64,000 nt of DNA from Macrostomum lignano (lineage: Eukaryota), in NCBI GenBank assembly GCA_002269645.1, contig NIVC01002509.1, positions 1-64,000 of the forward strand, given 5' to 3'. The translations under genes and the position numbers were made by a program. This document shows, piece after piece, positions 1 through 41,879 of this stretch; the stretch's first letter is position 1, and every line of letters starts with the position of its first letter. The notes beneath the pieces were generated by a model. That model saw only the letters and a program-made list of their open reading frames with translations, made no database searches and was not told where the DNA came from.

Positions 1-44
1 TCATTTGACTCCATGTCCTGTCATATGACTTCATATGATCTCCT

Positions 45-945
45 TAATCCCTGTCACTTCTCATCTCACTAATCCCTTACACTCTGATCTCCTTAATCCT
101 TGTCACTTTCATCTCACTAATCCCTGTCACTCTCATCTCACTAATCCCTGTCACACTCATCTCACTAATCCCTGTCACACTGATCTCACTAATCCCTGTC
201 ACTCTGATCTCACTAATTCCTGTCACTCTGATCTCCTTAATCCCTGTCACTCTGTTCTCACTAATCCCTGTCACTCTGATCTCACTAATCCCTGTCACTC
301 TGATCTCCCTAATCCCTGTCACTCTGATCTCACTAATCGCTGTCACACTGATCTCCTAATCCCTGTCACACTGATCTCCCTAATCCTGTCACTCTGATCT
401 CACTAATCCCTGTCACACTGATCTCCCTAATCCCTGTCACTCTGACTCCCTAATCCCTGTCACTCTGATCTCCCTAATCCCTATCACTCTGATCTCCCTA
501 ATCCCTGCCACTCTGATCTCACTAATCCCTGTCACTCTGATCTCCCTAATCCCTGTCACACTGATCTCCCTAATCCCTGTCACTCTGATCTCCCTAATCC
601 CTGTCACTCTGATCTCCCTAATCCCTGTCACTCTGACTCCCTAATCCCTGTCACTCACTGATCTCCCTAATCCCTGTCACTACTCTGACTCCCTAATCCC
701 TGTCACTCTGACTCCCTAATCCCTGTCACTCTGATCTCCTTAATCCCTGTCACTCTGATCTCACTAATCCCTGTCACTCTGATCTCCCTAATCCCTGTCA
801 CTCTGATCTCCCTAATCCCTGTCACTCTGATCTCACTAATCCCTGTCACTCTGATCTCACTAATCCCTGTCACTCTGATCTCCCTAATCCCTGTCACTCT
901 GACTCCCTAATCCCTGACAGTCTGACTCCCTAATCCCTGTCACTC
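45..945. repeat. 24-bp minisatellite (CTAATCCCTGTCACTCTGATCTCC), ~37 copies
   Basis: Period of 24 read directly; produces spurious 8-aa-repeat ORFs. Confidence 0.95.
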
Positions 946-1026
946 TGTACCTCTGTCCCTGTACCCGCCCTGTCACTCTGTCCCTGTACCCGCCCGAAAG
1001 ACAAGAGAAAGAAAGCAAGAACTCAC

Positions 1027-1111
1027 GAATTTCAGGTACAGAAACATTCTTTGACAGCCGTTTGTGACCTTGTCTGTAGGCTCTGTAATCTTCTGTAGGC
1101 GATTTGCCAAC
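1027..1111 (-). CDS. RIMBP2: RIMBP downstream internal exon (VGKSPTEDYRAYRQGHKRLSKNVSVPEI); gene continues beyond window start
   Basis: TTATTCCAG acceptor with a long T tract, GTGAGT donor, 85 nt, phase 0/1; phase-compatible with the donor at 4619. Confidence 0.7.
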
Positions 1112-1292: not shown

Positions 1293-1298
1293 TTTATT
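1293..1298 (-). terminator. Candidate AATAAA polyadenylation signal for the alternative terminal exon
   Basis: AATAAA ~55 nt downstream of TGA 1351, followed by T-rich sequence on the minus strand. Confidence 0.5.
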
Positions 1299-1350: not shown

Positions 1351-3648
1351 TCAGCTGGAGCCTTCGCCTCCTCCGGCGAGGTTCTTCGGGTCCAGCTTCT
1401 TGAACATGCTCGCCGTGCCCTCGCCGAACGCTTCAAATCTCTTCTTGGTGTCCCCACACGAAGGCGTCGAACTTTTTCTTAGTATCCTCGTTGAACGCTG
1501 CGAATTTCTTTTTATTTTCCTCGTTGAAGGCTTCGAAATTTTTTCGATTCTCCTCGTTCGCTTCGCGGATCTTTTCGCCCGTCTCATCGGCGATTTCCTC
1601 CACTTTTTCTTGGAATTCGTGGAAGCCTTTCTTTAGCCGGCCTAAGAAGCTCGAGTCCTCGGGATCGTTGGGATCGCCTTCGCACCTTCAACACCTTCGG
1701 CACCTTCAGCACCTTCGGCACCTTCAGCGCCTTCAGCAGCCGCAGCTTCAGCAGCCGCAGCTTCAGCAGCCGCAGCTTCAGCAGCCGCAGCTTCAGCAGC
1801 CGCAGCTTCAGCAGCCGCAGCTTCAGCAGCCGCAGCTTCAGCAGCCGCAGCTTCAGCAGCCGCAGCTTCAGCGGCCGCAGCTTCAGCAGCCACAGCTTCA
1901 GCAGCCGCAGCTTCAGCGGCCGCAGCTTCAGCAGCCACGGCAGCCTCCTCTTCAGGCGTTGGCAGGGGTTCACCCCTAGGGCCCCGCTGCCTACCCTCGG
2001 CCGCTTCGTCGACTGTCCGACCAAACTCGTCCAACAGTTCCCCGCCGGGTCCTCGGACAACCTGTCCGGTGGATTTGTCTTCGAGCACGCCGAACTCGTT
2101 GACCCGCCAGCCGCACTCGGAGGCCAGCAGATGACCGCTCGCCGGGTCGCGAGGCGCGCCGCACACCGGGCGACACCGAGCGTCGAAGTAGCGACCCTGG
2201 GCGTCTCTCAACGGCGCCCCGGTTGAGGCGTCGACCAGCAGGCCGAATTCGTTCTCGCGTCTTTCTGCCGAGTCAATAACGGCTTGACTGTCGGCGTCAA
2301 CAAGCTGCTGCTCGTCGGCCAGACAGACTTTCCGGCAAGCCAGCGGCCGACCTCCGGCGTCGAGCAGCTCACCGTTTGGCCCAAGCACGGGCTGCCCGGT
2401 GTCCGAGCTGGTCAGCACTCCGAGCTCGTTCGGCTCGGCCGGCGACACCAGACTGCCGTCCGGGCGGCGGACTCCGTGCACCGGACGACAATCGGAGTCG
2501 AAAAACTCGCCGGACGGACCTCGGACTGGCCGGCCGGACTCGTCCAGCAGGACGCCATTGTCGTTGACGCCGCCAGTTGGCAGCGGCGTGCCAGTCGACG
2601 TGTTCAACAGTCGGCCAGTGGACGCATCAAGCCGGGCCCGGCGACAATCGATTGGCCGGCCGGACGGGTCGAGCAGCTGGCCGTCCGGCCCCGGCTCGCT
2701 CAGCACGCCGTAGTAGTTCGGCTGCTGGGCCTCGTCGTCGACCAGCTGGCCGTTCGGCAGCCGCCGGCCGTAAACGACGGCGCCGTCGGGAGGGCCATAA
2801 AATTCTCCGTTTAGTCCGCGAAGCGGCAGCCCGCGCGAGTCGGCCAGCACGTTGAACTCGTTGGCCACGGCGTCGGCCACTTCGTCCGGCGAGTCAACAC
2901 GACGACAGGCGATTTCGGCTGCCGTTGCGTCCAATAGTTCGCGTCCGGTCGGCCCGGACAGTGGCCGGTTGTCTGTCCCGGACACTAACACGCCGAAGTA
3001 GTTGAGCTTTGGAGGCGGGTCGTCTGGCTTGCACGCCAGCAGACGGCCATCGTCGGGATGTCGGAGGCCGCCGAGAGCGGGCCGGCCGTCGGCACCAAAG
3101 AACTCGCCGCGGCTGCCTCGCAGCGGCACGGAGCCGACAGTCAGGATGCCGTGTGAGTTCGCCGCGGCCTCGGGAAACGCGTCCAACGGAGCAGCACCGT
3201 CCGGGACTGGCCGGCAGGCGATCGGCCGACCGTCCGAGTCGATTAGAGTGCCGTCTGGTCGGGTGAGAGCCAGGCCGGTGTCCAGATTAGCCAGGACGCC
3301 GAACCAGTTGACGGCGGGCGGCGGGTCGCCCAGCAGCTCGCCGTCGGGGCCGCGCGGCCCGTAGACCGGCTGGCCGTTGGAGGAGAAAAACTCGCCAGAC
3401 TGGCCTCGGATCGGGACGCCGTTTTCGTCGATTAGCACGCCGTTAGCGTTGACGCTTGTAGCGTCGCCGAAGGTCGTAGAATTATTAAATCCGTTAGACT
3501 CCGGTACAAGACGGCCGTCCGGGGTTCGAGTCGCGATTCGACAAAGTATGGGAGCGCCGTCTGGCGGAGATCGGAATTCGCCGCTCGGAGTTCGCAGCGG
3601 CTGACCGGTTGAGGGATCAACCAGGATGCCGAATTCGTTGGTTTGGGC
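1351..3648 (-). CDS. Large putative alternative terminal exon: unrecognised G/P/D-rich repeat domain, (AAAAE)n spacer, 11-mer amphipathic repeats, stop
   Basis: Phase-0 acceptor CCCCTTGTGTCAG at 3649; no Met codon in the 671-aa ORF apart from the TTG pseudo-start; GC-rich coding bias. Frame continues across 1-nt shifts at ~1681 and ~1456 to TGA at 1351. Confidence 0.75.
1690..1945 (-). repeat. Coding tandem repeat: 15-bp (AAAAE)n followed by 9-bp (GAE)n
   Basis: GGCTGCTGAAGCTGC-type unit repeated ~13-14 times inside the large exon. Confidence 0.92.
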
Positions 3649-3789
3649 CTGACACAAGGGGCGCGCATGCGGTAGTGGTGGTGGTGGTGGAAGGGTGCTG
3701 GTTTAATAGTGCAAGCTGTGCTTTGATTGACAGGCACGGAATAACGATGCTTCGCATATTTTTATGTGCAAAGGAGGATAAAAAGTTTA

Positions 3790-4350
3790 CAGGGCAGGGA
3801 TATAGGACAGGGAAACTATGGGTAGGAGTTGGGGTGGGTGTTTTATACACCCAGAGGAGGCTATAGTGTACATTAGGGCAGGAAAACTAAGGGTAGGAGT
3901 TGGGGTGGGTGTTTTATTCACCCAGAGGAGGCTATAGTGTACATTAGGGCAGGAAAACTAAGGGTAGGAGTTGGGGTGGGTGTTTTATTCACCCAGAGGA
4001 GGCTATAGTGTACATTAGGGCAGGCAAACTAAGGGTAGGAGTTTGGGTGGGTGTTTTATTCACCCAGAGGAGGCTATAGTGTACATTAGGGCAGGCAAAC
4101 TAAAGGTAGGAGTTGGGGTGGGTGTTTTATACACCCAGAGGAGGCTACAGTGTATATTAGGGCAGGAACAGCGAAGCTAGGAGTTGGGGTGGGTGTTTAA
4201 TACACTCAGAGGGAGGCTACAGAGTAAATTGGGGCAGGAAAATTGAGGGTAGAAGTTGGGGTGGGTGTTTTTTACACCCAGAGGAGGCTACAGTGTACAT
4301 TAGGGCAGGAAAACTGAGGGTAGGAGTTGGCTGGGTGTCTTATAGAACCT
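3790..4350. repeat. 71-bp minisatellite, ~8 copies
   Basis: CCCAGAGGAGGCTATAGTG… recurs at 3850, 3921, 3992 and onward. Confidence 0.9.
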
Positions 4351-4619
4351 GAGGAAGTTTTACCTACATGTAATAAGTAACGATATTGGCTAAACTCTAA
4401 AGAGTTAGCAGGTTAGTATATATACATAAAATGTTACTTATAGAAAACGTTTAAATAGCACAATCTACAACAAAATAAACGAGAGTAAGTTGATATCTTT
4501 TGTAAAGTTAAGACACAATCTATACAACATCAAAAGGCTACCACAGACACGTGAGAAAGGAAAAATCACTACGGATTCTAAGAAAGCTAAAATTGCTGCC
4601 AAATTGGTCTAGGCGTTAC

Positions 4620-5213
4620 CCTCGGATTGCGCGACGCGGACAACAGGTGCTGCCTGCGCAATCGATGGAATTTCGATGGACTAACGCTGCGACTTCGAAT
4701 CATTCGGTGGTCCATCAGGGCTGAGGTGTTCGAGGCGGCGGCGGCGGCGGCAGCTCCTCGCCTACTGGAGCGATGATGCTGGGAATGAGGCTGGCGCAGG
4801 CTGCCATGCTGAGGCCAGTCATCCTGCTGCTGCACCAGCTGCTGATGATGAGGCGGCAGCTGCCAGTCATCAAAGGAGGCCTGCATCTGCAGCTGCCTGT
4901 AACCGCCGCCGCCGCCAACAGGGTTGGCATTGTCGTACATGGAGGCGGGACCTGCAACGCCGTCGTTGGGATGACGAAGCAGGCCGCCCTGCTGCTGCTG
5001 CTGATGGTGATAAGCTTGATTATAACCGGCATGAACACCTGTTGGCGACCCGGTTAGATGAGGCGGCATACCAGCGGTTCTACTGAACCTGGACGACGGG
5101 CCAAGATTCAAAGGCCTACCAGACGTGGAAAGTCTTTGTTGTTGCTGCTGCTGTTGTTGTTGCAGGAGCAGAAGTTGCTGCTGTTGCTGCTTTCCGAAAG
5201 CCAGATGACGCTG
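4620..5213 (-). CDS. RIMBP2: RIMBP Gln/His-rich low-complexity exon
   Basis: Open frame QRHLAFGKQQQ…SASRNPR; tandem CAGCAG acceptor (start 5213 or 5210); GTAACG donor; phase 0/0. Confidence 0.75.
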
Positions 5214-5941: not shown

Positions 5942-6385
5942 ATCTTCTGGCCTAGGCAAATCGATAGACGAATTAGCGGCAGACAGAGTCAGCGAGCACG
6001 GCGGGTCCGAGTCTAAACTCTCCACAGTCTGACCATTGTGAGTACCGACTGTGCGCACGGTCAGGAAGGCGGTGTGAGGTGGCAGGGAGTTCTGGGCGAG
6101 CAGGCAGTGATCTGAGTACGCGTCCAAGCACTCCGTGACCCGGTGCCTGCCGTCAGCGTACACTGCGTAGCCGGTGACCCGAACACCGTTGGACACGCCG
6201 TCGGAGTTGGCAACGGTGACCGGTAGCCAGGTGACTAGCAGGGAATGGTCCTGAGGCCCGGGCTCGATTTGAACGTCCAGAGGAGCGTCGGGCAGGCCGC
6301 CGGGCGTGGTTCGAAACTCCAAGGTGGCGGTGAGGAGAGGCACGGAGGTGCCCGTAGTTTTCGGAGGCCTGGCCCGCACGCACAC
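5942..6385 (-). CDS. RIMBP2: RIMBP end of FN3-2 and FN3-3 (PDAPLDVQIEPGPQDHSLLVTWLPV…SNGVRVTGYAVYADG…ESLDS)
   Basis: Strong match to the RIMBP third FN3 pattern; (CT)n pyrimidine tract plus CAG acceptor; GTAAGT donor; 444 nt, phase 0/0. Confidence 0.95.
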
Positions 6386-6677
6386 CTGTCAGAGAGAGAG
6401 AGAGAGAGAGGCGCCTTTGTCGAGTCGTACATTTTAAGTTGCACCTTTTGACAAAAAACGCCTGTAAACTACTTATAGTAGAGTGCATTTGAACAAAATT
6501 ACATGTACGTAAATGAGTATAGGGATATTTCAAAATGGTCATATGATGTATGAGATGATGTCTGACACTGCCAATCAGATAAGATGTCAGGAAGGATGTC
6601 AGGATGTTAGATGAGATTGGGTAGAGTCAGGGGAGGTGAAAAAATACAAAGCATATTCATCATTAGAAGCCGCAAAC

Positions 6678-6836
6678 CTTGTAAAGAGTGTCGGCAGTGA
6701 GACCGCTAATGAGCAGCTTGTAGTTGCCAGGCGGGCACTGTTTGTACTCTTTGCCGTTGACCGTCACCACGTGTTGAAGGCTGGAAGCAGCCGGCAAGAA
6801 CATGAGCACCGCTGAGCCTGGGGTTACGTTTGATAC
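6678..6836 (-). CDS. RIMBP2: RIMBP FN3-2 (VSNVTPGSAVLMFLPAASSLQHVVTVNG…GLTADTLYK)
   Basis: FN3 strands with the GL-x-x-x-T-x-Y motif; CAG acceptor and GT donor; 159 nt, phase 0/0. Confidence 0.92.
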
Positions 6837-6939
6837 CTGGAGTTTTGTTAAAAATAACAGTGATATTATTAGTTTATAAAAGTTTGTCATGGATGAGTGT
6901 TAATAAAAGGTTGTCAAGTTCTGTGATCATGGTCTGGTC

Positions 6940-7625
6940 ATGGTCTCCAAGGGCTGACGGGGCTGTCAGTCTCCAAGGGCTAACGGGGCTGTCAGTCTCC
7001 AAGGGTTGTCAGTCTCCAAGGGCTGTCAGTCTCCAAGGGCTGTCAGAGTCTCCAAGGGCTGTCAGAGTCTCCAAGGGCTGTCAGAGTCTCCAAGGGCTGC
7101 CAGAGTCTCCAAGGGCTGTCAGAGTCTCCAAGGGCTGCCAGAGTCTCCAAGGGCTGCCAGAGTCTCCAAGGGCTGTCAGAGTCTCCAAGGGCTGCCAGAG
7201 TCTCCAAGGGCTGTCAGTGTCTCCCAAGGCTGACGGGCTGTCAGTGTCTCCCAAGGCTGACGGGCTGTCAGTGTCTCCCAAGGGCTGCCAGAGTCTCCAA
7301 GGGCTGTCAGTGTCTCCCAAGGCTGACGGGCTGTCAGAGTCTCCCAAGGCTGACGGGCTGTCAGAGTCTCCCAAGGCTGACGGGGCTGCCAGAGTCTCCC
7401 AAGGCTGACGGGCTGTCAGAGTCTCCGAAGGCTGACGGGCTGTCAGAGTCTCCCAAGGCTGACGGGCTGTCAGAGTCTCCCAAGGCTGACGGGCTGTCAG
7501 AGTCTCCCAAGGCTGACGGGCTGTCAGAGTCTCCCAAGGCTGACGGGCTGTCAGAGTCTCCCAAGGCTGACGGGCTGTCAGAGTCTCCCAAGGCTGATGG
7601 GGCTGCCAGAGTCTCCAAGGGCTGT
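6940..7625. repeat. Compound minisatellite of 19-bp and 27-bp units (AGAGTCTCCAAGGGCTGTC / GGCTGACGGGCTGTCAGAGTCTCCCAA)
   Basis: Direct inspection. Confidence 0.92.
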
Positions 7626-7850
7626 CAGTCACCAAGGGGTGTCGGGGTTTCCAAAAAGGTCTGCAGATGTGTGATGGGATCTGTAACAACAGACACGCTA
7701 TCTCTAGACGAGACGAATCGGGATACTGTAAGGTCGCTAAAGCCTCGAATGATTATTTCGTAGAATTTTCAAAGGTTGCTCTTTATTCTCTATAATTTTT
7801 CGATCTAAGCTTTGTTAGGACCAGATATTGGTCATAAAATTTAATCCAAC

Positions 7851-8369: not shown

Positions 8370-8830
8370 CAATAAAATGGAGATTGGGGAGATACAGGGA
8401 ATTGGGTGGGTGTGTGCAGATAGGCAAGGAATGGAGACGAAAATGTGGGGGAGACAGGGAATGGGGTGGGTGCGCGCATAGAGTGGCAAGAAATGGAGAT
8501 AAAAATGAGGGAGTGGGGAGACGGAATGGGGTGGGTGCGCGCATAGAGTGGCAAGGAATGGCGACGAAAATAATGGGGTGGGGGAGACAGGGAATGGGGT
8601 GGGTGCGCGCATAGAGTGGCAAGGAATGGCGACGAAAATAAGGGGGTGGGGAGACAGGGAATGGGGTTGGTGCGCGCATAGAGTGGTAAAGAATGGAGAC
8701 GAAAATAAGGGGGTCGGGGAGACAGGAAAGGGGGTGGGTGCGCGCATAGAGTGGCAAGAATTGGAAGTGAAATTGGGGTGGTAGGGAGACAGAGAGTGGG
8801 TGGATGCACGTATAGAGTGGTAAGGAATAT
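8370..8830. repeat. ~65-68-bp G-rich minisatellite, ~7 copies
   Basis: GGGTGCGCGCATAGAGTGG core recurs. Confidence 0.9.
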
Positions 8831-10320: not shown

Positions 10321-10462
10321 CTGCCGTGTAAATAGAAAGAGATTATATTTATAAGCATGATTTTAGATGTGTGCTAAACATTCGTTCCATTTGGATTTGG
10401 GGAGCTTATGTAAGCGTTTGGTTGATTTTAGGATAAACATAAGAGATCATTTAAGTCCTAAT

Positions 10463-11330
10463 TACCTCTGGGATCTGGGACTATTTGAGTCTTAAGTACC
10501 TCTGGGATCTGGGACTATTTGAGTCTTAAGTACCTCTGGGATCTGGAACTTTTTGAATCTTAATTACCTCTGGGATCTGGGACTATTTGAGTCTTAAGTA
10601 CCTCTGGGATCTGGGACTATTTGAGTCTTGAGTACCTCTGGGATCTGGGACTATTTGAGTCTTAAGTACCTCTGGGATCTGGGACTATTTGAGTCTTAAG
10701 TACCTCTGGGATCTGGAACTTTTTGAATCTTAATTACCTCTGGGATCTGGGACTATTTGAGTCTTGAGTACCTCTGGGATCTGGGACGATTTGAGTCTTA
10801 AGTACCTCTGGGATATGGAACTTTTTGAATCTTAATTACCTCTGGGATCTGGGACTATTTGAGTCTTAAGTATCTCTGGGATATGGAACTTTTTGAATCT
10901 TAATTACCTCTGGGATCTGGGACTATTTGAGTCTTGAGTACCTCTGGGATCTGGGACGATTTGAGTCTTAAGTACCTCTGGGATATGTGACTCTTTGAGT
11001 CTTAATTACCTCTGGGATGTGGGACTAGTTGAGTCTTAATTACCTCTGGGATATGGGACTCTTTGCGTCTTAAATACCTCTGGGATCTGAGACTATTTGA
11101 GTCTTAAATACCTCTGGGATCAGAGACTATTTGAGTCTTAATTAGCTCTGGGATCTGAGACTATTTGAGTCTTAATTACCTCTGGGATCTGAGACTATTT
11201 GAGTCTTAATTACCTCTGGGATCTGAGACTATTTGAGTCTTAATTACCTCTGGGATCTGAGACTATTTGAGTCTTAATTACCTCTGGGATCAGAGACTAT
11301 TTGAGTCTTAATTACCTCTGGGATCTGATA
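10463..11330. repeat. 34-bp minisatellite (ACCTCTGGGATCTGGGACTATTTGAGTCTTAAGT), ~25 copies
   Basis: Period of 34 read directly. Confidence 0.95.
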
Positions 11331-21090: not shown

Positions 21091-21195
21091 CTTCTTCATA
21101 TAGAATGACTCGCGAGATTTCTCGTCAATCAGGTGTTTTAAACGCGCGTGCTCGGACTCCAGCTCGCGTTTCTTCTCGAGCGACTCGCGCATGTG
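21091..21195 (-). CDS. RIMBP2: RIMBP coding exon (HMRESLEKKRELESEHARLKHLIDEKSRESFYMKK)
   Basis: TTTTTAG acceptor, which is also the edge of the 43 bp array; 105 nt, phase 0/0; donor GTAGCC is weak. Confidence 0.7.
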
Positions 21196-21975
21196 CTAAA
21201 AATATAATTTTAAATGGTGACTCATTATATAATGGTAGCTAAAAATAGAATTTTAAATGGTGACTCATCATATAATGGTAGCTAAAAATAGAATTTTAAA
21301 TGGTGACTCATTATATAATGGTAGCTAAAAATATAATTTTAAATGGTGACTATTATATAATGGTAGCTAAAAATAGAATTTTAAATGGTGACTCATTATA
21401 TAATGGTAGCTAAAAATAGAATTTTAAATGGTGACTCATCATATAATGGTAGCTAAAAAAAGAATTTTAAATGGTGACTATTATATAATGGTAGCTAAAA
21501 ATATAATTTTAAATGGTGACTCATTATATAATGGTAGCTAAAAATATAATTTTAAATGGTGACTCATTATATAATGGTAGCTAAAAATAGAATTTTAAAT
21601 GGTGACTCATTATATAATGGTAGCTAAAAATAGAATTTTAAATGGTGACTATTATATAATGGTAGCTAAAAATAGAATTTTAAATGGTGACTCATTATAT
21701 AATGGTAGCTAAAAATAGAATTTTAAATGGTGACTCATCATATAATGGTAGCTAAAAATAGAATTTTAAATGGTGACTATTATATAATGGTAGCTAAAAA
21801 TATAATTTTAAATGGTGACTCATTATATAATGGTAGCTAAAAATATAATTTTAAATGGTGACTATTATATAATGGTGGCTAAAAATAGAATTTTAAATGG
21901 TGACTCATTATATAATGGTAGCTAAAAATAGAATTTTAAATGGTGACTCATAATATAATGGTAGCTAAAAATAGA
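21196..21975. repeat. 43-bp AT-rich minisatellite (CTAAAAATAGAATTTTAAATGGTGACTCATTATATAATGGTAG), 18 copies
   Basis: Period of 43 (42 in the TGACTATT variant). Confidence 0.95.
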
Positions 21976-22345
21976 ACGGCGGGTGATTAGTCACCGCGAA
22001 ATGATCTAAAAGTCAGCAACTGTTTATAATGGACGTCGCTAAAGGAAGGAAAGCGATTTTTAGGATAATTTAGCAACTATCACCTTGTCGATGTTCTAAT
22101 TTTCATCATATTGAAGAAAATTTTGGCGCTAAAATCTTATATTAGAAATAACTAAGAGATAACAACTTTGGGGACGATTTTAGGGTCATAACTTCGGGGA
22201 TAACTTACGATCACGGCTTAGGGAATAATTTATGGATCATAACTTTGAGGATAACTTAGGGGTCACGACTTTGGGAATAATTTAGGGTTCACAGCTTTGG
22301 AATAAGGAAGAGGGCTGCAACAAACTAAGCAACCAGCCGACTCAC

Positions 22346-22701: not shown

Positions 22702-22869
22702 CTGAAAATTAACGGTTTGTCAGATTGAGAATTGAAACACTCGGGTGTGTAGGCCTAGGCATAGTAAACGTTCCTCGAATATTTAAAAGGTTTGGGATAA
22801 ATAAATGGCAAAGAACCGAAGGTCATTTTAGGATAATTCACGAATAACCAGGTTCGGGATAGCTGAAGG

Positions 22870-23900
22870 AGATAAAATCCCAGAGAATCTTTTTTGGGGA
22901 TAACTGAAGGGGATAATATCCCAGGAATCATTTTTAGAGATAACTGAAGGGGATAAAATCCCAGGAATCATTTTTAGAGATAACTGAAGGGGATAAAATC
23001 CCAGGAATCATTTTTAGAGATAACTGAAGGGGATAAAATCTCAGGAATCTTTTTTAGGGTGACTGGAGGGGATAAAATTCCATGAATCATTTTTGGGGAT
23101 AACTGAAGGGGATAATATACCATCAATCAGTTTTGGGGATAACTGAAGGGGATGATATCCCATGAATCATTTTTGGGGATAACTGAAGGGGATAATATAC
23201 CATCAATCAGTTTTGGGGGTAACTGAAGGGGATAATATCCCATGAATCATTTTTGGGGATAACTGAAGGGGATAATATACCATCAATCAGTTTTGGGGAT
23301 AACTGAAGGGGATGATATCCCATGAATCATTTTTGGGGATAACTGAAGGGGATAATATACCATCAATCAGTTTTGGGGTAACTGAAGGGGATAATATCCC
23401 ATGAATCATTTTTGGGGATAACTGAAGGGGATAATATACCATCAATCAGTTTTGGGGATAACTGAAGGGGATGATATCCCATGAATCATTTTTGGGGATA
23501 ACTGAAGGGGATAATATACCATCAATCAGTTTTGGGGATAACTGAAGGGGATGATATCCCATGAATCATTTTTGGGGATAACTGAAGGGGATAATATACC
23601 ATCAATCAGTTTTGGGGGTAACTGAAGGGGATAATATCCCATGAATCATTTTTGGGGATAACTGAAGGGGATAATATCCCATGAATCATTTTTGGGGATA
23701 ACTGAAGGGGATAATATCCCATGAATCATTTTTGGGGATAACTGAAGGGGATAATATCCCATGAATCATTTCTGGGGATAACTGAAGGGGATAATATACC
23801 ATCAATCAGTTTTGGGGATAACTGAAGGGGATAATATCCCATGAATCATTTTTGGGGATAACTGAAGGGGATGATATCCCATGAATCATTTTTGGGGTAA
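22870..23900. repeat. 40-bp minisatellite with alternating variants (80-bp higher-order unit)
   Basis: GGGGATAACTGAAGGGGAT core with alternating ATACCATCAATCAG and ATCCCATGAATCAT. Confidence 0.93.
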
Positions 23901-24194
23901 CATGCGGGGATAATTAAAGCGGATTCCTTCAGAAGTCAAGATTATGGGAAAAAATATTAAAGAAAATGTACAAAAAACAGCAAATCAATAGAGAAGACAA
24001 ACCAAATCAGTCTGGGCGGTGTGCTCTTCTTGAAGCTGAGATTTTAGCTGCTCATTCTCGCCAGACAAAGCCGCGAGACTGCTTTCCTGAAGAAGAGAAG
24101 GGAAGCGAGGGGAGCACTGGTTACACAAGGACATTTAATGTCTGCAGAGTGCAGATGGATGTAATAAACAGCATGGGATGATGGGGCCGCGCAG

Positions 24195-24669: not shown

Positions 24670-25620
24670 TCTCTATATTAGATCTCAATCCTATATATCC
24701 AAGATGTCTATCCTAGATGTCGATCCTCTCTATCCTAGATATCTATTCTCTCTATCCTAGATATCTATCCTCTCTATCCTAGATATCTATTCTCTCTATC
24801 CTAGATATCTATCCTCTCTATCCTAGATATCTATCCTCTCTATCCTAGATATCTATCCTCTCTATCCTAGATATCTATCCTCTCTATCTTAGATATCTAT
24901 CGTCTCTATCCTAGATATCTATCCTCTCGATTCTATATGTCTTTTCCTTTCCATCCTAGATGTATATTCTCTCCACCATAGATGTATATTCTCTCCATCC
25001 TAGATGTATATTCTCTCCATCCTAGATATATATTCTCTCCATCCTAGATGTATATTCTCTCCATCCTAGATATATATTCTCTCCATCCTAGATATATATT
25101 CTCTCCATCTTAGATATATATTCTCTCCATCCTAGATATATATTCTATCCATCCTAGATATATATTCTCTCCATCCTAGATATATATTCTCTCCATCCTA
25201 GATATACATTCTCTCCATCCTAGATATATATTCTCTCCATCCTAGATATACATTCTCTCCATCCTAGATATACATTCTCTCCATCCTAGATATATATTCT
25301 CTCCATCCTAGATATATATTCTCTCCATCCTAGATATATATTCTCTCCATCCTAGATATATATTCTCTCCATCCTAGATATATATTCTCTCCATCCTAGA
25401 TATATATTCTCTCCATCCTAGATATACATTCTCTCCATCCTAGATATATATTCTCTCCATCCTAGATATACATTCTCTCCATCCTAGATATATATTCTCT
25501 CCATCCTAGATATATATTCTCTCCATCCTAGATATATATTCTCTCCATCCTAGATATATATTCTCTCCATCCTAGATGCATTTTCTCTCCATCCTAGATG
25601 TATATTTTCTGCATTACCGA
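24670..25620. repeat. 22-bp minisatellite (TCCTAGATATATATTCTCTCCA), ~40 copies
   Basis: Direct inspection. Confidence 0.95.
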
Positions 25621-25962: not shown

Positions 25963-27089
25963 CTTATGAGTTTTTTAGGGCAACAGAGAATAGCGCTTTG
26001 ATAACAGAATGAAACAGTTAAACTACAATTGTTTCCTGTTGTTAGGACGCAAATTCTATACTGGATTAAATAATAAAATGCACACGCACTAAGCTCAGAG
26101 CAGCTAAGAGCTCAGAGGGGGTGGGTACTTGGATTGGGAGTAAATTGGATAGGGAAAGAATGGGAAGAGAGGAATGATGGGGTTGCTGCTCTGCGATGGG
26201 GAGACTGAGAATACGCAGCAAGCCAAGCCTCCTTTCGCGTACGCAAGCAACTGTACTGCAAGGTGGCTCAAAAGCAGGCTGCTCTCTCAGTTGCAGACTC
26301 AGGCCGACTGTACATTCATTCTCCGCACCCACCTCAGCGAGAGGGGAAGAGAGGGGGGAGAGGAGCAGGGAAGGGAGAGTCTGGAGAGCCCGATCAATCA
26401 ATACATTTGGTATAGAAAGTGGGGGAGAGAGGAGAGGATAGGGCAAGGCGATTTGAGAAGGCGGTTCTAGAATACTCGTAGAACTCTGAGCTCACTCCCT
26501 CCCTCCCTGCTTGGCCCCTAGCCAAAAGGCTCAGCCAAGCGGTTAGTGGCTTCCCAACCGGCAGCAGCAGCAGGCCGTGTGGAGTCTCAAGGCGAGCTTT
26601 TCTTGGCCGGGGTAAAAGTTGGGAATTAGCACGGGGGGGGCTGTAGGAGGATGGGGTGAAGAAAGTTCACACTACAGGAGGCGCACGAGCATCTCGGAGA
26701 CTAGGATGGGGAGGCCGGAGAGGCTGAGGGGAGAGAAAAAAGGGGGGAGGCCGAAAACGGTGGCAGACAGAGATATTCCCTAACCATAATCCCCAATGCG
26801 GAGCGCTCTCCCTATTCCCCCTGGGAGCAGAGTTGTGTATAGAAATGAATGGGAAGGCGATTCCAAGCCTTTGCAGATGCCCAGATTAGCTTTAACCCGG
26901 CCTGAAATCCCTCTTCAAACACATCTCGAAATCCCCTTAGATAGCGCCACAGAGAAGGGTATTGGTTTCCAAATTTTCAAATCATTTAAATAGAAATTAA
27001 AACAAATATAAAATCCGATTACGCGTGTACATATTTAGCAGACTTAAGCTAATGACTGTTTGAGTTTGAGATCAACAAATAAAAAGCAA

Positions 27090-28260
27090 ATGAATCTCAA
27101 AATGAAAATGGCACTCCCCAATATCTAGTGGCAAATTTATCTCAAAATGAAAATGGCACTCGCCAATATCTAGTGGCAAATGTACCTCAAAATGAAAATG
27201 GCACTCGCCAATATCTAGTAGCAAATGTACCTCAAAATGAAAATGGCACTCGCCATTATCTAGTGGCAAATGTATTTCAAAATGAAAATGGCACTCGCCA
27301 ATATCTAGTGGCAAATGTATCTCAAAATGAAAATGGCACTGCCAGTGTCTGCCACTATCTAGTGACAAATCTATCTCAAAATGAAAATGGCACTGCCAGT
27401 GTCTGCCACTATTTAGTGGCAAATGTATTTCAAAATGAAAATGGCACTCGCCAATATCTAGTGGCAAATGTATCTCAAAATGAAAATGGCACTGCCAGTG
27501 TCTGCCACTATCTAGTGACAAATCTATCTTAAAATGAAAATGGCACTGCCAGTGTCTGCCACTATCTAGTGGCAAATGTATCTCAAAATGAAAATGGCAC
27601 TCGCCAATATCTAGTGGCAAATGTATCTCAAAATGAAAATGGCACTGCCAGTGTCTGCCACTATCTAGTGGCAAATGTATCTCAAAATGAAAATGGCACT
27701 CGCCAATATCTAGTGGCAAATTTATCTCAAAACGAAAATGGCACTCGCCAGTATCTAGTGGCAAATGTATCTCAAAATGAAAATGGCACTCGCCCATATC
27801 TAGTGGCAAATTTATCTCAAAATGAAAATGGCACTCGCCAATATCTAGTGGCAAATTTATCTCAAAACGAAAATGGCACTCGCCAGTATCTAGTGGCAAA
27901 TGTATCTCAAAATGAAAATGGCACTCGCCAATAGCTAGTGGCAAATGTATCTCAAAATGAAAATGGCACTCGCCAATATCTAGTGGCAAATGTATCTCAA
28001 AATGAAAATGGCACTCGCCATTATCTAGTGGCAAATGTATCTCAAAATGAAAATGGCACTCGCCATTATCTAGTGGCAAATGTATCTCAAAATGAAAATG
28101 GCACTCGCCAATATCTAGTGGCAAATGTATCTCAAAATGAAAATGGCACTCGCCAATATCTAGTGGCAAATGTATCTTAAAATGAAAATGGCACTGCCAG
28201 TGTCTGCCACTATCTAGTGGCAAATGAGTCTCAAATGGCACTGCCACTATCTAGTGACAA
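27090..28260. repeat. 45/54-bp minisatellite (TATCTAGTGGCAAATGTATCTCAAAATGAAAATGGCACTCGCCAA)
   Basis: 15-aa periodic ORFs on both strands; the 54-bp variant carries GCCAGTGTCT. Confidence 0.95.
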
Positions 28261-32864: not shown

Positions 32865-33600
32865 CGACTGCAACTGACATAAGCGCCTACCTTTCAGCTG
32901 ACTGCAACTGACATAAGCGTCTACCTGTCAGCTGACTGCAACTGACATAAGCGCCTACCTTTCAGCTGACTGCAACTGATATAAGCGCCTACCTTTCAGC
33001 TGACTGCAACTGACATAAGCGTCTACCTGTCAGCTGACTGCAACTGACATAAGCGCCTATCCTTCAGCTGACTGCAACTGACATAAGCGCCCATCCTTCA
33101 GCTGACTGCATCTGACATAAGCGCCTATCCTTCAGCTGACTGCATCTGACATAAGCGCCTATCCTTCAGCTGACTGCAACTGACATAAGCGCCTATCCTT
33201 CAGCTGACTGCAACTGACATAAGCGCCTATCCTTCAGCTGACTGCATCTGACATAAGCGCCTATCCTTCAGCTTACTGCAACTGACATAAGCGCCTATCC
33301 TTCAGCTGACTGCAACTGACATAAGCGCCCATCCTTCAGCTGACTGCATCTGACATAAGCGCCTATCCTTCAGCTGACTGCATCTGACATAAGCGCCTAT
33401 CCTTCAGCTTACTGCAACTGACATAAGCGCCTATCCTTCAGCTGACTGCAACTGACATAAGCGCCTATCCTTCAGCTTACTGCAACTGACATAAGCGCCT
33501 ATCCTTCAGCTGACTGCAACTGACATAAGCGCCTATCCTTCAGCTGACTGCAACTGACATAAGCGCCTATCCTTCAGCTTACTGCAACTGACATAAGCGC
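32865..33600. repeat. 34-bp minisatellite (CTGACTGCAACTGACATAAGCGCCTATCCTTCAG), ~21 copies
   Basis: Period of 34; head-to-tail with no spacers. Confidence 0.95.
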
Positions 33601-35159: not shown

Positions 35160-35785
35160 AAGATTGTATCTATTCCTTCAAAACCCTACATCTATCCCTT
35201 CACCAACCCAACATCTATACTTTCACCAACCCTACATCTGTCCCTTCACCAACCCTACATCTATCCCTTTAACAACCCTACATCCATCCCTAGACCAAGC
35301 CTACATCTATCCCTTCACCAATCCTACACATCTATTCCTAGACCAACCCTACATCTATCCCTTCATCAACCCTACATCTATCCCTTCATATATCCCTTCA
35401 CCAACCCTACATCTGTCCCTTCATCAACCCTACATCAAGCCCTTTTAACAACCGTAAATCTATCCCTTCACCAACCCTAAATCTATCCCTTCACCAACCC
35501 TAAATCTATCCCTTCACCAACCCTACATCTATCCCTTCACCAACCCTAAATCTATCCCTTCACCAACCCTACATCTATCCCTTCACCAACCCTACATCTA
35601 TCCCTTCACCAACCCTACATCTGTCCCTTCACCAACCCTACATCTATCCCTTCACCAACCCTACATCTATCCCTTCACCAACCCTACATCTATCCCTTCA
35701 CCAACCCTACATCTATCCCTTCACCAACCCTACATCTATCCCTTCACAAACCCTACATCTTCACCAACCCTACATCTATCCCTCC
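35160..35785. repeat. 23-bp minisatellite (CCTTCACCAACCCTACATCTATC)
   Basis: Begins ~18 nt from the donor at 35803. Confidence 0.93.
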
Positions 35786-35803
35786 ATCCCCAGAATCTCT
35801 CAC

Positions 35804-36505
35804 CAGCGCGTTCAGCGTCCTCTGCGCCGATTCCCATTCGCCGTCGCCATCTTCGTCGGCAGCGTCCACCGCGGCAGCGAGATGCCGACGCAGGGCACCC
35901 AGCTCGCCGGCCAGCGCCGCCTCGCGACCCTCCAGGCTCTGCCCGGCGCCCAGCCGGTCTCTCAGCTCGCGATTGGCGTACCTGGCCACTTTCAGCTCTT
36001 TCTGCAGCCGGTTGACCAGCTCGGCGTTGCTGCCGGCCTTCTGCAGCAGCTGCTGCTGCTGGCGGAGCTCAGCCGACTCGGCCTGGGCAGCCCGCCTGAG
36101 CGCCCGCTCGGAGTCCAGCCGGGCCATCAGGCGGTCCAGAACTCGGCGCACCTCGGCCGGATTCGCAACCCGATCCGGCGAAGCTCGCACCGCCGCCGCT
36201 GCGGCTGCCGTTGTGGTCGAAGACGCCGCCGAATAGGCCGACCGTTGGCTTCGCTCCGACGGCGAGCGTCGCTGCTGCTGCTGCTGATTTTGGCTTCGCC
36301 GACGCGCCGACGAAGCCGATGGGCGTCTTCGCGAGTCCTTCTCGGAGTCGGCGTCTTCGTCTTCGACATCGTCTGCGTTGTCGACATCCTCGAGTTCAGT
36401 GTCGCTGTCTCGGTGGTCTGTGCGATCATTCGACCGGCTGGATGGGCGGCCGGCTCGCCGATGCGGCTGCTGCTGCAGAGGCTGGCGATAAGCTCCGAGC
36501 TCCAT
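35804..36505 (-). CDS. RIMBP2: RIM-binding protein, first recognisable coding exon (low-complexity N-terminus plus coiled coil)
   Basis: ATG at 36505 opens MELGAYRQ...QRTLNAL; donor GTGAGA at 35803; 702 nt, phase 0, matching the downstream exon chain. A further upstream exon cannot be excluded. Confidence 0.75.
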
Positions 36506-40257: not shown

Positions 40258-40844
40258 TCACTTGCCATGATGCCTGACAGCTGATCGTCTTCGTTCTGAG
40301 ATTCTTCGTCCCGCTTCCGCTGCTGCACAAGACCGGCCTATTTCTTGCACTTCTTGGCTTGGCTGCGAACGAGACGGGGGCGGCGGGAGTGGACAGGGCA
40401 CAGCCCGATTGGCCAGACGGTCGGCATGCTCGTTGCCTGGGATGCCGCAGTGGCCGGGCAACAACTAGACGATGATGCCCGCATTAGGGGTTAGGCGACT
40501 CTCGGCTGGCGAGATCCCGGCTGGCACTAGCGTGCACCAGTTCCAGGGCGGCGACTTCCTCGTCGAAACTGGATATGATGGGCCTCGGTATGAATAACCA
40601 GGTTGGCTGGGTCGCCCTCCGTGACCACGAAGGCGTGGCGCATTGGCGATCGTGCCCCGGGTCACGGAACCGTCGGTGTGGACTGTCCAGGCTTGTGGGG
40701 ACAGCGAGGCAACGAGCTCCTGGATTCGGTCAGTGGCGGCGCTACGGATGAGGTCCAGTTCGATGTGGGGGACGTCGATATGTTGAGGCAAAATCTGCGT
40801 AGCCTCCCGGGAGGCTGGGAGGAGGGTAGGTTCGCTTGGCGGAA
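40258..40844 (-). mobile_element. Second non-LTR RNase H fragment
   Basis: AWTVHTDGSV and LPGHCGIPGNEHADRLAN motifs in adjacent broken ORFs. Confidence 0.75.
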
Positions 40845-41380
40845 ACAACAACGACAACAGAATACGCGATTAGCGACACTAGGCGCGCTTCAAGGCCAGG
40901 TCGCAAATGAACGCCACGCTATCGGCCGGATCCGGGGCGCCGGCGTCAGCCAGCAGGCAGTCGACGAAACGCCGAGTGCGCGCCTGCCCCCGCCTGTAGG
41001 GTACCTGCATTGTTAGCAGCAGCACCTCCTGCACCGGCTCTGGGCAGTACGACTCGGCGTGAATGATGTGGCCTGCCAGCTGGAGTCGCCGACGGCGCAA
41101 CAGCTCGCTTGGATGGACCAGGCCGGCGCGGTGATACAAAGCTGCGTTGGTCACTCGCTCGTAGCCGATTTTGAAGGCGGCGCGCAGCAAGCCAGCGTGC
41201 GCCGCATTAACTTGTTACTCAAGCGACTCCGTCAGCGTCCAGGTCTCGGTGTTGTGCAGCGCGCAGGACGGTCTCGATCACCGCCTGGAAAAACGCCGCC
41301 CTCTGGCGGTCAGGTAAGGCCTCGGACTGCAGGACTGCCCTCACAGAACGAAAGGCAGACCAGGCAAGCCCGTGGCGACG
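40845..41380 (-). mobile_element. RTE-clade LINE 3' fragment (RT thumb and C-terminus)
   Basis: AWSAF…FFQAVIETVL…TETWTLT…LLRAAFKI…RRRRLQLAGHI; internal stop and frameshift; short (GTT)-like tail near 40860-40845. Confidence 0.8.
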
Positions 41381-41879
41381 CAGTTCTTCCAATTCACCAG
41401 CCTGAGGTCAGTGGCAGGTCACTGTCAGTTTCTTGCAATCTGCTTCTGTGCCTCTGCATTTACCAGCTGCAAAAACTGGCGATTATCCCATCGATGCGCA
41501 AAATCACAAAGAAGTCAACGGCCTCAGAATCCTCTGAAATTTCAATCCACGGGTTGACACCAGGAGTTGTCGTGAGATGCCGGCGCAGAAAGTCAGACAT
41601 CGCGGCCACTGTTGACTTCTTTCCACTCTTCCACTTTTGTTTGTTCTTCCTGTACTTCGGCTTGTAGGTCTTCTTCTGCGTTCAACGCGTCAGCGGTGAC
41701 AAATGATTCATTGCCATCATCATTGCACTGTCAGCTGTCTTGGATAGCTCACTCTCCGACTCGCTTATGTCCAATCCAAGACGATGGAGAGCTTCAGCAG
41801 CAGCTGTACGCCGTCGGACTTGCTGCTGAGCCATGGTCAGTTGCTACGGCTCCTTATTGCTACGGCTCCTGCTTCGGCT

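What the first reader, a model, noticed from the sequence alone, without database searches (positions are those of the whole stretch)
1960..3648. Unrecognised ~560-aa Gly/Pro/Asp-rich repeat domain spliced onto a RIM-binding protein
Seen: eleven degenerate units start N-(E/x)-(F/x)-G-(V/I/L)-L and continue with G-x-P-(L/V/I)-x-G-P-x-G-E-(F/L)-x-D-x-x-G-R-P. They alternate between a type ending (A)CR and a type ending GxRxPDGxL(L/V), giving an A-B dimer period. The DNA is diverged while the protein motif is kept, which points to an old, selected coding repeat rather than a fresh minisatellite. Established: RIMBPs are SH3/FN3 active-zone scaffolds, and I know of no such domain in them. Inference: a lineage-specific beta-hairpin-type repeat module recruited to a presynaptic scaffold. 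This is the best candidate for a novel system in the window.
Basis: partly seen in the sequence, partly recalled or inferred. Interest (0 to 1): 0.82.

Follow-up and report, generated by a model that had tools for sequence, protein, structure and literature searches.

The report
Orphan repeat domain in RIMBP gene
A 2-kb exon just downstream of an animal RIM-binding-protein (synaptic scaffold) gene encodes eleven old, selectively preserved ~50-residue repeats that match no known protein family; it is real and new, but its link to the scaffold and its function are inferred, not shown.

Summary
Window 3648..1960 (- strand) is one stop-free, Met-free frame. It carries 11 units that start N-x-x-[G/N]-[V/I/L]-L (0.08 expected by chance) and alternate between two types. 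The DNA copies are randomised at synonymous sites while the peptide motif is kept, and all length differences keep the frame, so this is an old coding repeat under selection.

No known family matches: Pfam, PDB sequences, 5.8 billion and 1.84 billion protein collections, JGI metagenome DNA and Foldseek gave nothing significant. The only weak hits are unrelated low-complexity "D-x-x-G-x-[P/L]-h" repeat proteins.

A five-row internal pseudo-alignment gives an AlphaFold model (pLDDT 76) made of short, tight beta-hairpins. Glycine recurs every 8 residues.

Upstream on the same strand lie SH3-I and RIMBP-type FN3 exons. A phase-0 donor (4620) and acceptor (3648) and matching GC3 fit splicing onto RIMBP, but no transcript evidence exists. 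The exon carries its own (AAAAE)n helix, an 11-residue-periodic amphipathic tail, a stop and AATAAA. It therefore looks like a 3'-terminal, probably alternative, exon that lacks SH3-II/III.

Three RIMBP relatives lack the repeat. The function (elongated spacer or binding platform, possible membrane-binding tail) is inference. Moderate interest.

The parts
1960..3648 (-). Repeat domain: 563 aa in 11 units. Window coordinates: u1 3639-3451, u2 3450-3310, u3 3309-3160, u4 3159-3004, u5 3003-2863, u6 2862-2719, u7 2718-2566, u8 2565-2431, u9 2430-2254, u10 2253-2101, u11 2100-1960. Even units are type B, odd units 3-11 type A, and u1 is a hybrid.
3649..3661 (-). Splice acceptor CCCCTTGTGTCAG| in front of the repeat exon (AG at 3650-3649). 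The exon starts in phase 0 at 3648.
4620..5213 (-). Gln-rich low-complexity exon, 198 aa. Acceptor AAAAACAG|CAGCGT, donor CCGAGG|GTAACG (GT at 4619-4618), both in phase 0. It is the presumed exon before the repeat exon.
   Evidence: no Pfam hit
5942..6385 (-). RIMBP FN3-III exon (Ig_RIMBP2 PF25523, E 3.7e-30). Donor GAAGAT|GTAAGT in phase 0.
1686..1959 (-). Helix-prone low-complexity segment TPEEEAAV(AAEAA)n(GAE)n. It is encoded by a young 15-bp minisatellite (1731-1936, 13.7 copies, 96% matches) and a 9-bp array (1677-1738).
1642..1685 (-). Frame break 1. The main ORF stops at TAG 1644-1642. Either this 44-nt GT..AG stretch is a mini-intron (GAAG|GTGCGA...CTTCTTAG|GC), or one G is missing in GCGAAGG (~1681). 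Either fix joins the frame to the tail.
1351..1641 (-). C-terminal tail with a perfect 11-residue period (..NRKNFEAFNEE NKKKFAAFNED TKKKFDAFVWD TKKRFEAFGEG TASMFKK..). It is strongly amphipathic as a helix. It needs one G fewer in GGGG 1455-1452 (frame break 2). Stop TGA at 1353-1351.
1293..1298 (-). AATAAA polyadenylation-type signal 53 nt after the tail's stop.
1027..1111 (-). Exon-like 85-nt piece (VGKSPTEDYRAYRQGHKRLSKNVSVPEI) with acceptor TTTTTTTTATTCCAG| and donor |GTGAGT. It is open in phase 0, so it is in frame with the Q-rich exon if the repeat exon is skipped. It is a possible continuation of RIMBP toward SH3-II/III outside the window.
   Evidence: no counterpart found in L001-L003

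Best explanation
Window 3648..1960 (-) encodes a lineage-restricted, structured tandem-repeat domain with a three-level hierarchy. A ~8-residue Gly-periodic micro-repeat (G-h-h-h-D-x-x-G / x-P-h-x-G) builds a ~48-residue unit, and units pair into a ~97-residue B-A dimer, about five and a half times over. Each micro-repeat most likely forms a tight beta-hairpin or turn, so the domain would be a long string or stack of hairpins, net acidic.

The exon is most likely spliced in phase 0 to the Gln-rich linker exon of the RIMBP gene, after SH3-I and three FN3 domains. It is most likely a 3'-terminal, probably alternative, exon. It runs on into an (AAAAE)n helix-prone spacer and an 11-residue-periodic amphipathic helix, then a stop and AATAAA.

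The predicted product is a RIMBP isoform in which the Ca-channel/RIM-binding SH3-II/III pair is replaced. In its place sit an elongated repeat module (spacer or multivalent binding platform) and an apolipoprotein/synuclein-style membrane-surface-binding tail.

Shown:
- the coding repeat and its selection
- the absence of known relatives
- the RIMBP neighbourhood
- compatible splice sites
- the amphipathic periodicity of the tail

Inferred:
- the splicing itself
- the hairpin fold
- any spacer, tether or membrane-binding role
For: Coding and selection:
- The frame is 686 codons open; the other frames hold 9-17 stops.
- The motif occurs 11 times against 0.08 expected.
- pS is 0.64 and pN 0.42. 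By my Jukes-Cantor arithmetic on those means, dS is about 1.4, dN about 0.6, and the ratio about 0.4.
- Codon identity at conserved residues is at the random level, 0.49 against 0.45.

Hierarchy:
- The Gly autocorrelation peaks at lag 8 (z 5.6) and again at lag 16.
- Same-type units are 45% identical, cross-type units 37%.

Fold:
- The AlphaFold2 model of units 8-9 with the five B-A dimers as alignment has mean pLDDT 75.8. Residues 1-78 score 80-89, and the model consists only of short beta bridges.
- The best, non-significant Foldseek neighbours are hairpin-repeat proteins: alternansucrase 6t1p (E 0.24), teneurin-3 8r54, and dextransucrases DSR-M and DSR-E.

Gene context:
- SH3-I and Ig_RIMBP2 domains lie upstream on the same strand.
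- The FN3-III, Q-rich and repeat exons all have phase-0 junctions with consensus sites.
- The ORF has no Met.
- GC3 is 0.74, against 0.76 and 0.74 in RIMBP exons.

Terminal exon:
- There is a stop, and AATAAA lies at 1298-1293.

Tail:
- The helical hydrophobic moment at 98.2 degrees is 1.09, against 0.30 +/- 0.16 in 2000 shuffles, none of which reached it.
- There is a sub-threshold Apolipoprotein PF01442 match (E 0.0015) and a PhaP match (E 0.011).

Lineage restriction:
- Nothing was found in the 5.8 billion or 1.84 billion protein sets or in metagenome DNA.
- Three RIMBP loci or transcripts from other animals lack the repeat. L001 instead has SH3-II about 4 kb after FN3-III.
Against: - There is no transcript, EST or orthologue evidence for the 4620->3648 junction or for expression.
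- The organism is unidentified and its genome is absent from the collections searched. 'No homologue' therefore rests on whichever relatives happen to be sampled.
- The protein collections hold animal genes only as exon-sized fragments.
- The confident AlphaFold model rests on a pseudo-alignment of only five internal repeats. The whole domain folded alone scores pLDDT 40.5.
- Foldseek matches are all non-significant.
- The tail needs two frame corrections within 230 nt, while the 2 kb upstream needs none. The tail may be decaying, or the model of it may be wrong.
- Canonical RIMBPs carry SH3-II/III (PMC7337501, PMC7456537) and none is visible here. The exon-like piece at 1111..1027 suggests that the main RIMBP transcript may skip the repeat exon.
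Confidence: 0.5

Rival explanations
1. It is a separate gene nested in, or abutting, the RIMBP gene on the same strand. The repeat exon, possibly together with the Gln-rich exon (which contains Met codons), would belong to an independent transcript that ends at AATAAA 1298-1293. RIMBP itself would splice past it to the exon at 1111..1027 and on to SH3-II/III outside the window.
For: - The exon has its own stop and poly(A) signal.
- The exon-like piece at 1111..1027 has strong splice sites and is in frame with the Q-rich exon when the repeat exon is skipped.
- The tail and repeats are unlike anything in known RIMBPs (PMC7337501).
- The Q-rich exon has no RIMBP-specific signature.
Against: - The repeat ORF has no ATG.
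- No candidate first exon lies in 3657-4587, which is mostly a 71-bp tandem repeat.
- The FN3-III donor and the Q-rich acceptor are phase-compatible.
- GC3 is the same as in the RIMBP exons.
- An alternative last exon explains the same facts without a second promoter.
Confidence: 0.2
2. The exon is part of RIMBP, but it is not a folded domain. It would be an intrinsically disordered Gly/Pro/Asp-rich linker whose repeated short motifs (N-E-F-G-V-L, G-R-P, P-D-G) act as multivalent linear binding sites or drive condensate formation at the active zone.
For: - The composition is low-complexity: G+P+D+S make up 39%, and there are few large hydrophobic residues.
- The single-sequence AlphaFold model scores pLDDT 40.5.
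- The region sits where RIMBPs have a long non-conserved linker. In Drosophila isoform F, FN-III(3) ends near residue 1042 and SH3-II starts at 1318 (PMC7337501).
- RIM/RBP condensates are documented (PMC12874637, title and abstract).
Against: - Conserved positions cover about 40 of about 48 residues per unit with regular Gly spacing. That is more than linear motifs usually need.
- The pseudo-alignment model scores pLDDT 80-89 over 78 residues.
- Unit lengths are tightly kept at 45-52 aa for most units.
Confidence: 0.22
3. It is a decaying or non-functional exon: a former coding repeat that is now an untranslated or pseudogenic remnant downstream of the functional RIMBP exons.
For: - There are two frame breaks in the 3' tail within 230 nt.
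- No homologues were found anywhere.
Against: - A stop-free run of 686 codons at 67% GC has a chance probability of about 1e-7, by my estimate from base composition.
- No frameshift occurs among the 11 units, and the motifs are intact.
- Both tail breaks sit in G runs next to minisatellites, where assembly errors are common.
- One break is equally well explained by a 44-nt GT..AG intron.
Confidence: 0.06
4. The domain was acquired horizontally from bacteria, for example from actinobacterial proteins with (GPNGELLGPDGQPLR)n tails.
For: The most similar stretch by identity is to P0004, with 49% identity over 53 residues. BLASTP finds 34-40% identity over 105-187 residues.
Against: - The library-wide E-value is only 7e-6, and the match comes from a 15-residue low-complexity period.
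- P0004 has no N-x-F-G-V-L motif, no A/B units and no Cys-Arg motif.
- GC3 and the splice structure are native to the locus.
Confidence: 0.02

Closest known systems
Canonical RIM-binding proteins (Drosophila RIM-BP/Rbp, vertebrate RIMBP1/2, C. elegans RIMB-1)
   Same: The same gene neighbourhood and order are present here: an N-terminal coiled-coil-like region, SH3-I, three FN3/Ig_RIMBP2 domains, then a long low-complexity linker. This architecture is described in PMC7337501 and PMC7456537.
   Different: Known RIM-BPs continue with SH3-II and SH3-III, and none is described with a Gly/Pro/Asp repeat domain. Here no SH3-II/III is visible. In their place are a 563-aa repeat, an (AAAAE)n segment and an 11-mer amphipathic tail. 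Three other animal RIMBP loci lack the repeat.
Short 'h-h-D-x-x-G-x-[P/L]-h' repeat proteins: DUF3659 (PF12396)-type repeats in a talin/Sla2-like protein (P0001), TrbI-family giant bacterial proteins (P0002, P0003), and the actinobacterial (GPNGELLGPDGQPLR)n protein (P0004)
   Same: They share the micro-motif (a hydrophobic pair, Asp/Asn, two residues, Gly, then Arg/x, then Pro/Leu and a hydrophobic residue) and a 7-8-residue period. These were the only hits in 1.84 billion representatives, with E 1.5e-9 to 7.4e-6.
   Different: The window protein itself has no DUF3659 hit at E <= 10. These proteins lack the 48-residue unit, the N-x-F-G-V-L start, the A/B alternation and the (A/D)-C-R motif. 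The similarity is periodic and compositional and is not evidence of common descent.
Beta-hairpin repeat solenoids: the glucan- or cell-wall-binding repeats of glucansucrases (6t1p, 5ngy, 4tvd) and the YD-repeat shell of teneurins (8r54)
   Same: These were the top Foldseek neighbours of the dimer model. From general knowledge, they have the same kind of building block: a short hairpin with a hydrophobic pair before a D/N-x-x-G turn.
   Different: The matches are not significant (E 0.24-6, TM 0.15-0.21). There was no Pfam hit to CW_binding or RHS repeats. The periods differ, about 20 and about 38 residues in those families against 8 and 48 here; those family periods are from my own knowledge and were not tested.
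11-residue-periodic amphipathic helices (apolipoprotein A1/A4/E, phasin PhaP; from general knowledge also alpha-synuclein, perilipins and LEA proteins). This applies to the tail only.
   Same: The tail has an exact 11-residue period, Phe/Ala on one face and Lys/Glu/Asn on the other. Its helical moment is 1.09 against 0.30 in shuffles. It has weak PF01442 and PF09602 matches.
   Different: The scores are far below the family cut-offs (18.7 against 90 bits). The reading frame needs two corrections. Lipid binding is untested.

Membership tests
RIM-binding protein (for the gene that the exon would join) | First SH3 domain, N-terminal of the FN3 array | tested here: met
   The joined exon pieces at ~12080 and ~10278 (-) match SH3_9 at E 3.9e-12 and SH3_2 at E 1.1e-10.
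RIM-binding protein (for the gene that the exon would join) | Array of three FN3 / Ig_RIMBP2 (PF25523) domains | tested here: met
   FN3-III scores 104.5 bits and FN3-I 30.5 bits against a cut-off of 27. The middle exon 6899..6666 looks FN3-like but has no Pfam hit.
RIM-binding protein (for the gene that the exon would join) | C-terminal SH3-II and SH3-III pair | tested here: inconclusive
   No SH3 signature lies downstream of FN3-III within the window. Only 1.6 kb of sequence follows the repeat ORF. The exon-like piece at 1111..1027 may lead on to SH3-II/III outside the window.
RIM-binding protein (for the gene that the exon would join) | The repeat exon is physically part of the RIMBP mRNA | not testable with these tools
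   Only the compatibility of splice sites, phases, GC3 and the lack of Met could be checked. No transcript data are available.
DUF3659 (PF12396) | Significant match to the family profile | tested here: not met
   hmmscan of the 671-aa ORF and of a B-A dimer at E <= 10 lists only Dioxygenase_C below its cut-off. The family appears only in the weak hits P0001 and P0002.
YD/RHS repeats and cell-wall/glucan-binding (CW_binding) hairpin repeats | Profile match, or a significant structural match to a solved member | tested here: not met
   There was no Pfam hit and no PDB sequence hit. Foldseek's best matches were 6t1p at E 0.24, TM 0.15, and 8r54 at E 2.2.
RTX / beta-roll Ca-binding nonapeptide repeats | GGxGxDxUx nonapeptide with a 9-residue period | tested here: not met
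   The Gly period is 8, not 9. The consensus contains no GGxGxD, and there was no Pfam hit.
Apolipoprotein A1/A4/E (PF01442) (tail only) | Profile score above the gathering threshold | tested here: not met
   The score is 18.7 bits against a cut-off of 90, E 0.0015. The 11-mer amphipathic periodicity, which bears on 'works like', is met.

The most novel reading that the evidence does not exclude
A previously unseen beta-hairpin repeat fold (8-residue Gly period, 48-residue unit, A/B dimer), followed by a rigid (AAAAE)n helix and a synuclein/apolipoprotein-like 11-mer amphipathic helix, forms an alternative C-terminus of RIM-BP. It would convert the Ca-channel coupler into a long vesicle- or membrane-tethering isoform in one animal lineage. 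The acidic D-x-x-G turns might make it Ca2+-responsive.
Probability: 0.1. Interest if true: 0.7.

Novelty: new variant of a known kind. Interest (0 to 1): 0.4.

Why it matters
If the exon is expressed as modelled, one animal lineage has an active-zone scaffold isoform in which the canonical Ca-channel/RIM-binding SH3 pair is replaced. The replacement is a long new repeat module with a candidate membrane-binding helix. That would be a natural experiment on how RIM-BP links vesicles, channels and the scaffold.

Independently of RIMBP, the domain is a clean example of an orphan protein repeat. It is ancient, selected and hierarchically organised, and it has no detectable relative among about 15 billion predicted proteins. 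It is therefore a candidate new repeat family or fold for structural study. If it turns out to be a nested orphan gene or a disordered linker, it is of ordinary interest.

Tried and rejected
Searches with the repeat domain itself:
- Pfam on the ORF and on a dimer gave nothing.
- PDB sequence searches with the protein and with a profile of the 11 units gave only chance hits with E >= 0.004.
- The 5.8-billion protein search gave no hit, with the protein or with the unit profile.
- Exhaustive HMMER on 1.84 billion representatives gave five low-complexity hits and none at E <= 1e-10.
- In the JGI metagenome DNA scan, 96 stretches matched a peptide pattern but none was confirmed.

Structure:
- AlphaFold on the whole domain alone scored pLDDT 40.5 and was not usable.
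- Foldseek of the dimer model against PDB and BFVD gave nothing at E <= 0.001.

Relatives and context:
- A search for the repeat in three RIMBP loci from other animals (L001-L003) with a unit HMM found none.
- The mini-exon, Q-rich exon and tail have no counterpart in those loci.
- An Rfam scan of the window, run to help place the organism, found nothing.
- A literature search for RIM-BP in flatworms found nothing useful.

Rejected ideas:
- A fresh minisatellite. The DNA copies are saturated at synonymous sites.
- A cassette exon that uses the internal donor GAGG|GTAGGC at ~1995. Joined in that phase, the 1111 exon runs into a TGA (my reading of the sequence).
- A start codon or signal peptide just upstream. 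The ATG at ~3757 is in another frame, and no GT..AG pair restores the frame.
- Bacterial origin.

The organism could not be identified. The window's own proteins are absent from the collections.
Full report
1. What is there

The minus strand of window 3648..1960 translates into 563 residues without a stop. This lies inside an open frame of 686 codons, 3702..1645. The mechanical ORF is 3657..1642, 671 aa. The other five frames of the region carry 9-17 stops. The region is 67% G+C. From base composition I estimate the chance of such an open frame at about 1e-7.

Eleven units begin with N-x-x-[G/N]-[V/I/L]-L, 45-63 residues apart. The same motif appears 0.08 times on average in 20,000 shuffles of the protein, and never more than twice. 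The unit alignment gives the consensus NxFGVLxDxxxGxPLRGPxGExxDxxGRPxxxRxxRxPDGxLL.

The A/B alternation is real. Units 2, 4, 6, 8 and 10 have GEF[F/Y]...G.R.P(D/N)G.L[L/V]. Units 3, 5, 7 and 9 end in (A/D)CR. Same-type pairs are 45% identical and cross-type pairs 37%.

Below the unit level there is a finer period. Glycine recurs every 8 residues (autocorrelation z = 5.6 at lag 8, 3.4 at lag 16). Each unit is therefore about six micro-repeats of the type G-h-h-h-D-x-x-G / x-P-h-x-G.

2. It is an old, selected coding repeat, not a minisatellite

- Tandem Repeats Finder sees nothing of note inside the domain.
- Direct DNA repeats are only 14-48 nt long at 60-93% identity.
- Between units the proportion of synonymous differences is 0.64, close to saturation. 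The non-synonymous proportion is 0.42. With a Jukes-Cantor correction (my arithmetic) that is roughly dS 1.4 and dN 0.6.
- Where two units share a residue they use the same codon in 49% of cases. Codons drawn independently from the exon's usage would agree in 45%.
- All insertions and deletions between units keep the frame.

By contrast, the (AAAAE)n stretch that follows the domain is a young 15-bp minisatellite with 13.7 copies at 96% matches.

3. No known family

- Pfam gives nothing for the ORF or for a B-A dimer.
- PDB sequences give nothing, with either the protein or a profile of the units.
- The 5.8-billion-protein collection gives no hit, with either the protein or the unit profile.
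- The JGI metagenome DNA scan gives none.
- An exhaustive HMMER pass over 1.84 billion cluster representatives gives five hits, the best at E 1.5e-9 and none at 1e-10.

All five hits are repeat proteins. Four of them (P0001-P0004) have the micro-motif h-h-D/N-x-x-G-x-[P/L]-h:
- a talin/Sla2-like protein with (IDEQGRL)n that Pfam calls DUF3659
- two giant TrbI-family bacterial proteins
- an actinobacterial protein ending in (GPNGELLGPDGQPLR)n

These are described. They share the 7-8-residue period. They do not share the 48-residue unit, the N-x-F-G-V-L start, the A/B alternation or the Cys-Arg motif. I read this as convergence of a common hairpin micro-motif, not as homology.

One caveat applies. 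The collections hold animal genes only as exon-sized fragments, and they do not contain the window's own genome. The absence of relatives therefore speaks only for the animals that happen to be sampled. Those do include 66 fragments of RIMBP FN3-III at 41-73% identity.

4. Structure

AlphaFold2 on the whole domain without an alignment is uninformative (pLDDT 40.5). With the five B-A dimers aligned to each other as a pseudo-alignment (A2), the model of units 8-9 reaches a mean pLDDT of 75.8. Residues 1-78 score 80-89. The model consists only of one- to three-residue beta bridges every 6-8 residues, that is, a chain of tight hairpins.

Foldseek finds no significant neighbour in PDB or BFVD. How the hairpins pack (solenoid, propeller or open string) is unknown.

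5. Gene context

Upstream on the same strand lies a RIM-binding-protein gene:
- a Met-initiated, coiled-coil-like ORF at 36505..35753
- SH3-I, with SH3_9 at E 3.9e-12
- FN3-I, PF25523 at 30.5 bits
- an FN3-like exon at 6899..6666
- FN3-III at 6385..5942, PF25523 at E 3.7e-30

This is the N-terminal two-thirds of the canonical architecture. In Drosophila isoform F, SH3-I spans 606-681, FN-III(1-3) spans 745-1042, SH3-II spans 1318-1382 and SH3-III spans 1445-1509 (PMC7337501). RIM-BP 'bears three SH3 domains' (PMC7456537).

FN3-III ends at GAAGAT|GTAAGT in phase 0. A Gln-rich exon, 5213..4620, begins after AAAAACAG| in phase 0 and ends at CCGAGG|GTAACG in phase 0. The repeat exon begins after CCCCTTGTGTCAG| in phase 0 at 3648.

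The repeat ORF contains no Met at all, so it cannot be a stand-alone first exon. Its GC3 (0.74) equals that of FN3-III (0.76) and of the N-terminal exon (0.74).

After unit 11 come TPEEEAAV(AAEAA)n(GAE)n and a TAG at 1644-1642. Coding-looking sequence continues in two other frames. The first shift can be bridged in either of two ways:
- a 44-nt GT..AG mini-intron at 1685..1642, or
- one extra G in GCGAAGG, which also prolongs the 9-bp gcN-gaa-ggN array.

The second shift is bridged by dropping one G from GGGG 1455-1452.

The corrected tail reads GFHEFQEKVEE IADETGEKIRE ANEENRKNFEA FNEENKKKFAA FNEDTKKKFDA FVWDTKKRFEA FGEGTASMFKK, a perfect 11-residue period that runs across the second break. 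Its helical hydrophobic moment at 98.2 degrees is 1.09, against 0.30 +/- 0.16 in shuffles, with 0 of 2000 reaching it. It has sub-threshold matches to Apolipoprotein A1/A4/E and to phasin. A TGA follows at 1353-1351 and an AATAAA at 1298-1293.

The exon thus looks like a 3'-terminal exon. No SH3-II/III is visible downstream, but only 1.6 kb remains. That stretch contains an 85-nt exon-like piece (1111..1027) with very good splice sites. The piece is in frame with the Q-rich exon if the repeat exon is skipped.

The simplest reading is an alternative last exon. A nested gene is the main rival. Why two frame breaks sit in the tail while the 2 kb upstream has none is unexplained. Assembly errors next to minisatellites, recent decay, or a real mini-intron plus a real early stop are all possible.

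7. Relatives

Three RIMBP loci or transcripts from other, unidentified animals were fetched: L001 (12 kb), L002 (1.4 kb, transcript-like) and L003 (15 kb). None contains the repeat when searched with an HMM of the units. L001 shows the ordinary arrangement, with an SH3 domain (RIFIALFDYDP...) about 4 kb after FN3-III. The repeat is therefore not a general RIMBP feature.

8. How it most likely works (inference)

I propose an elongated, net-acidic chain of hairpins, 11 units long, acting as a spacer or multivalent binding surface. It would be followed by a helix-prone (AAAAE)n rod and an amphipathic 11-mer helix of the kind that lies on lipid surfaces.

Attached to the SH3-I/FN3 part of RIM-BP, in place of the channel- and RIM-binding SH3 pair, this would suit a tether between the scaffold and a membrane such as a vesicle. 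The D-x-x-G turns might bind Ca2+. None of this has been tested.

I put about 0.9 on 'real selected coding repeat without known family'. I put about 0.6 on 'part of a RIMBP transcript', about 0.55 on 'folded hairpin repeat', and about 0.1-0.15 on the tether idea.

9. Verdict

This is a new family of short hairpin-type tandem repeat in an unusual host gene. Interest is moderate (0.4). Orphan repeats inserted in scaffold linkers are not rare, and nothing functional is shown. Still, the domain is unusually clean and old, and the predicted isoform is testable with a single RNA data set.

Noticed in passing
window 1351-1689 (- strand): The coding-looking C-terminal tail has a perfect 11-residue amphipathic period. 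Two frame breaks interrupt it, one at ~1681 or the 44-nt GT..AG stretch 1685..1642, and one at GGGG 1455-1452. The cause could be assembly error, a mini-intron or recent decay.
   Followed up: partly
window 1731-1936: A young 15-bp minisatellite (13.7 copies, 96% matches) encodes (AAAAE)n directly after the old repeat domain. A 9-bp (GAE)n array follows at 1677-1738. Its length probably varies between individuals.
   Followed up: partly
window 1027-1111 (- strand): An 85-nt exon-like piece with acceptor TTTTTTTTATTCCAG| and donor |GTGAGT lies downstream of the AATAAA. It is in frame with the Q-rich exon if the repeat exon is skipped, which hints that RIMBP continues beyond the window start.
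   Followed up: partly
window 51291-62003: A 10.7-kb satellite of a 26-bp unit (CCTGAACAGACTATTTGAGAATGGCC, 418 copies, 97% matches) sits inside an intron of the plus-strand BRO1/ALIX gene.
   Followed up: no
window 43817-63166 (+ strand): This is an ALIX/PDCD6IP-like gene. BRO1 domain pieces lie at 43817-44191, 50746-51177 and 62642-63166, and the ALIX V-domain starts in the last piece (Pfam).
   Followed up: partly
window 36-947, 3803-4355, 6943-7643, 8385-8828, 10449-11327, 21195-21976, 22856-23914, 24710-25614, 27086-28199, 32866-33600: Almost every intron of the RIMBP gene carries its own long minisatellite (units of 22-71 bp, 8-41 copies, 84-97% matches). This density of unrelated arrays is unusual.
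   Followed up: no
window 40465-43387 (- strand): This is retroelement debris between the two genes. The ORFs have a weak zf-RVT match, and their sequences look like reverse transcriptase or RNase H, though that was not verified beyond one weak Pfam hit.
   Followed up: partly
L002 (Logan SRR31578648, 1415 nt): This intron-less contig carries two adjacent Ig_RIMBP2 ORFs. It looks like an assembled RIMBP transcript from another animal. It is 47% identical to the window's FN3-III over 94 aa.
   Followed up: no
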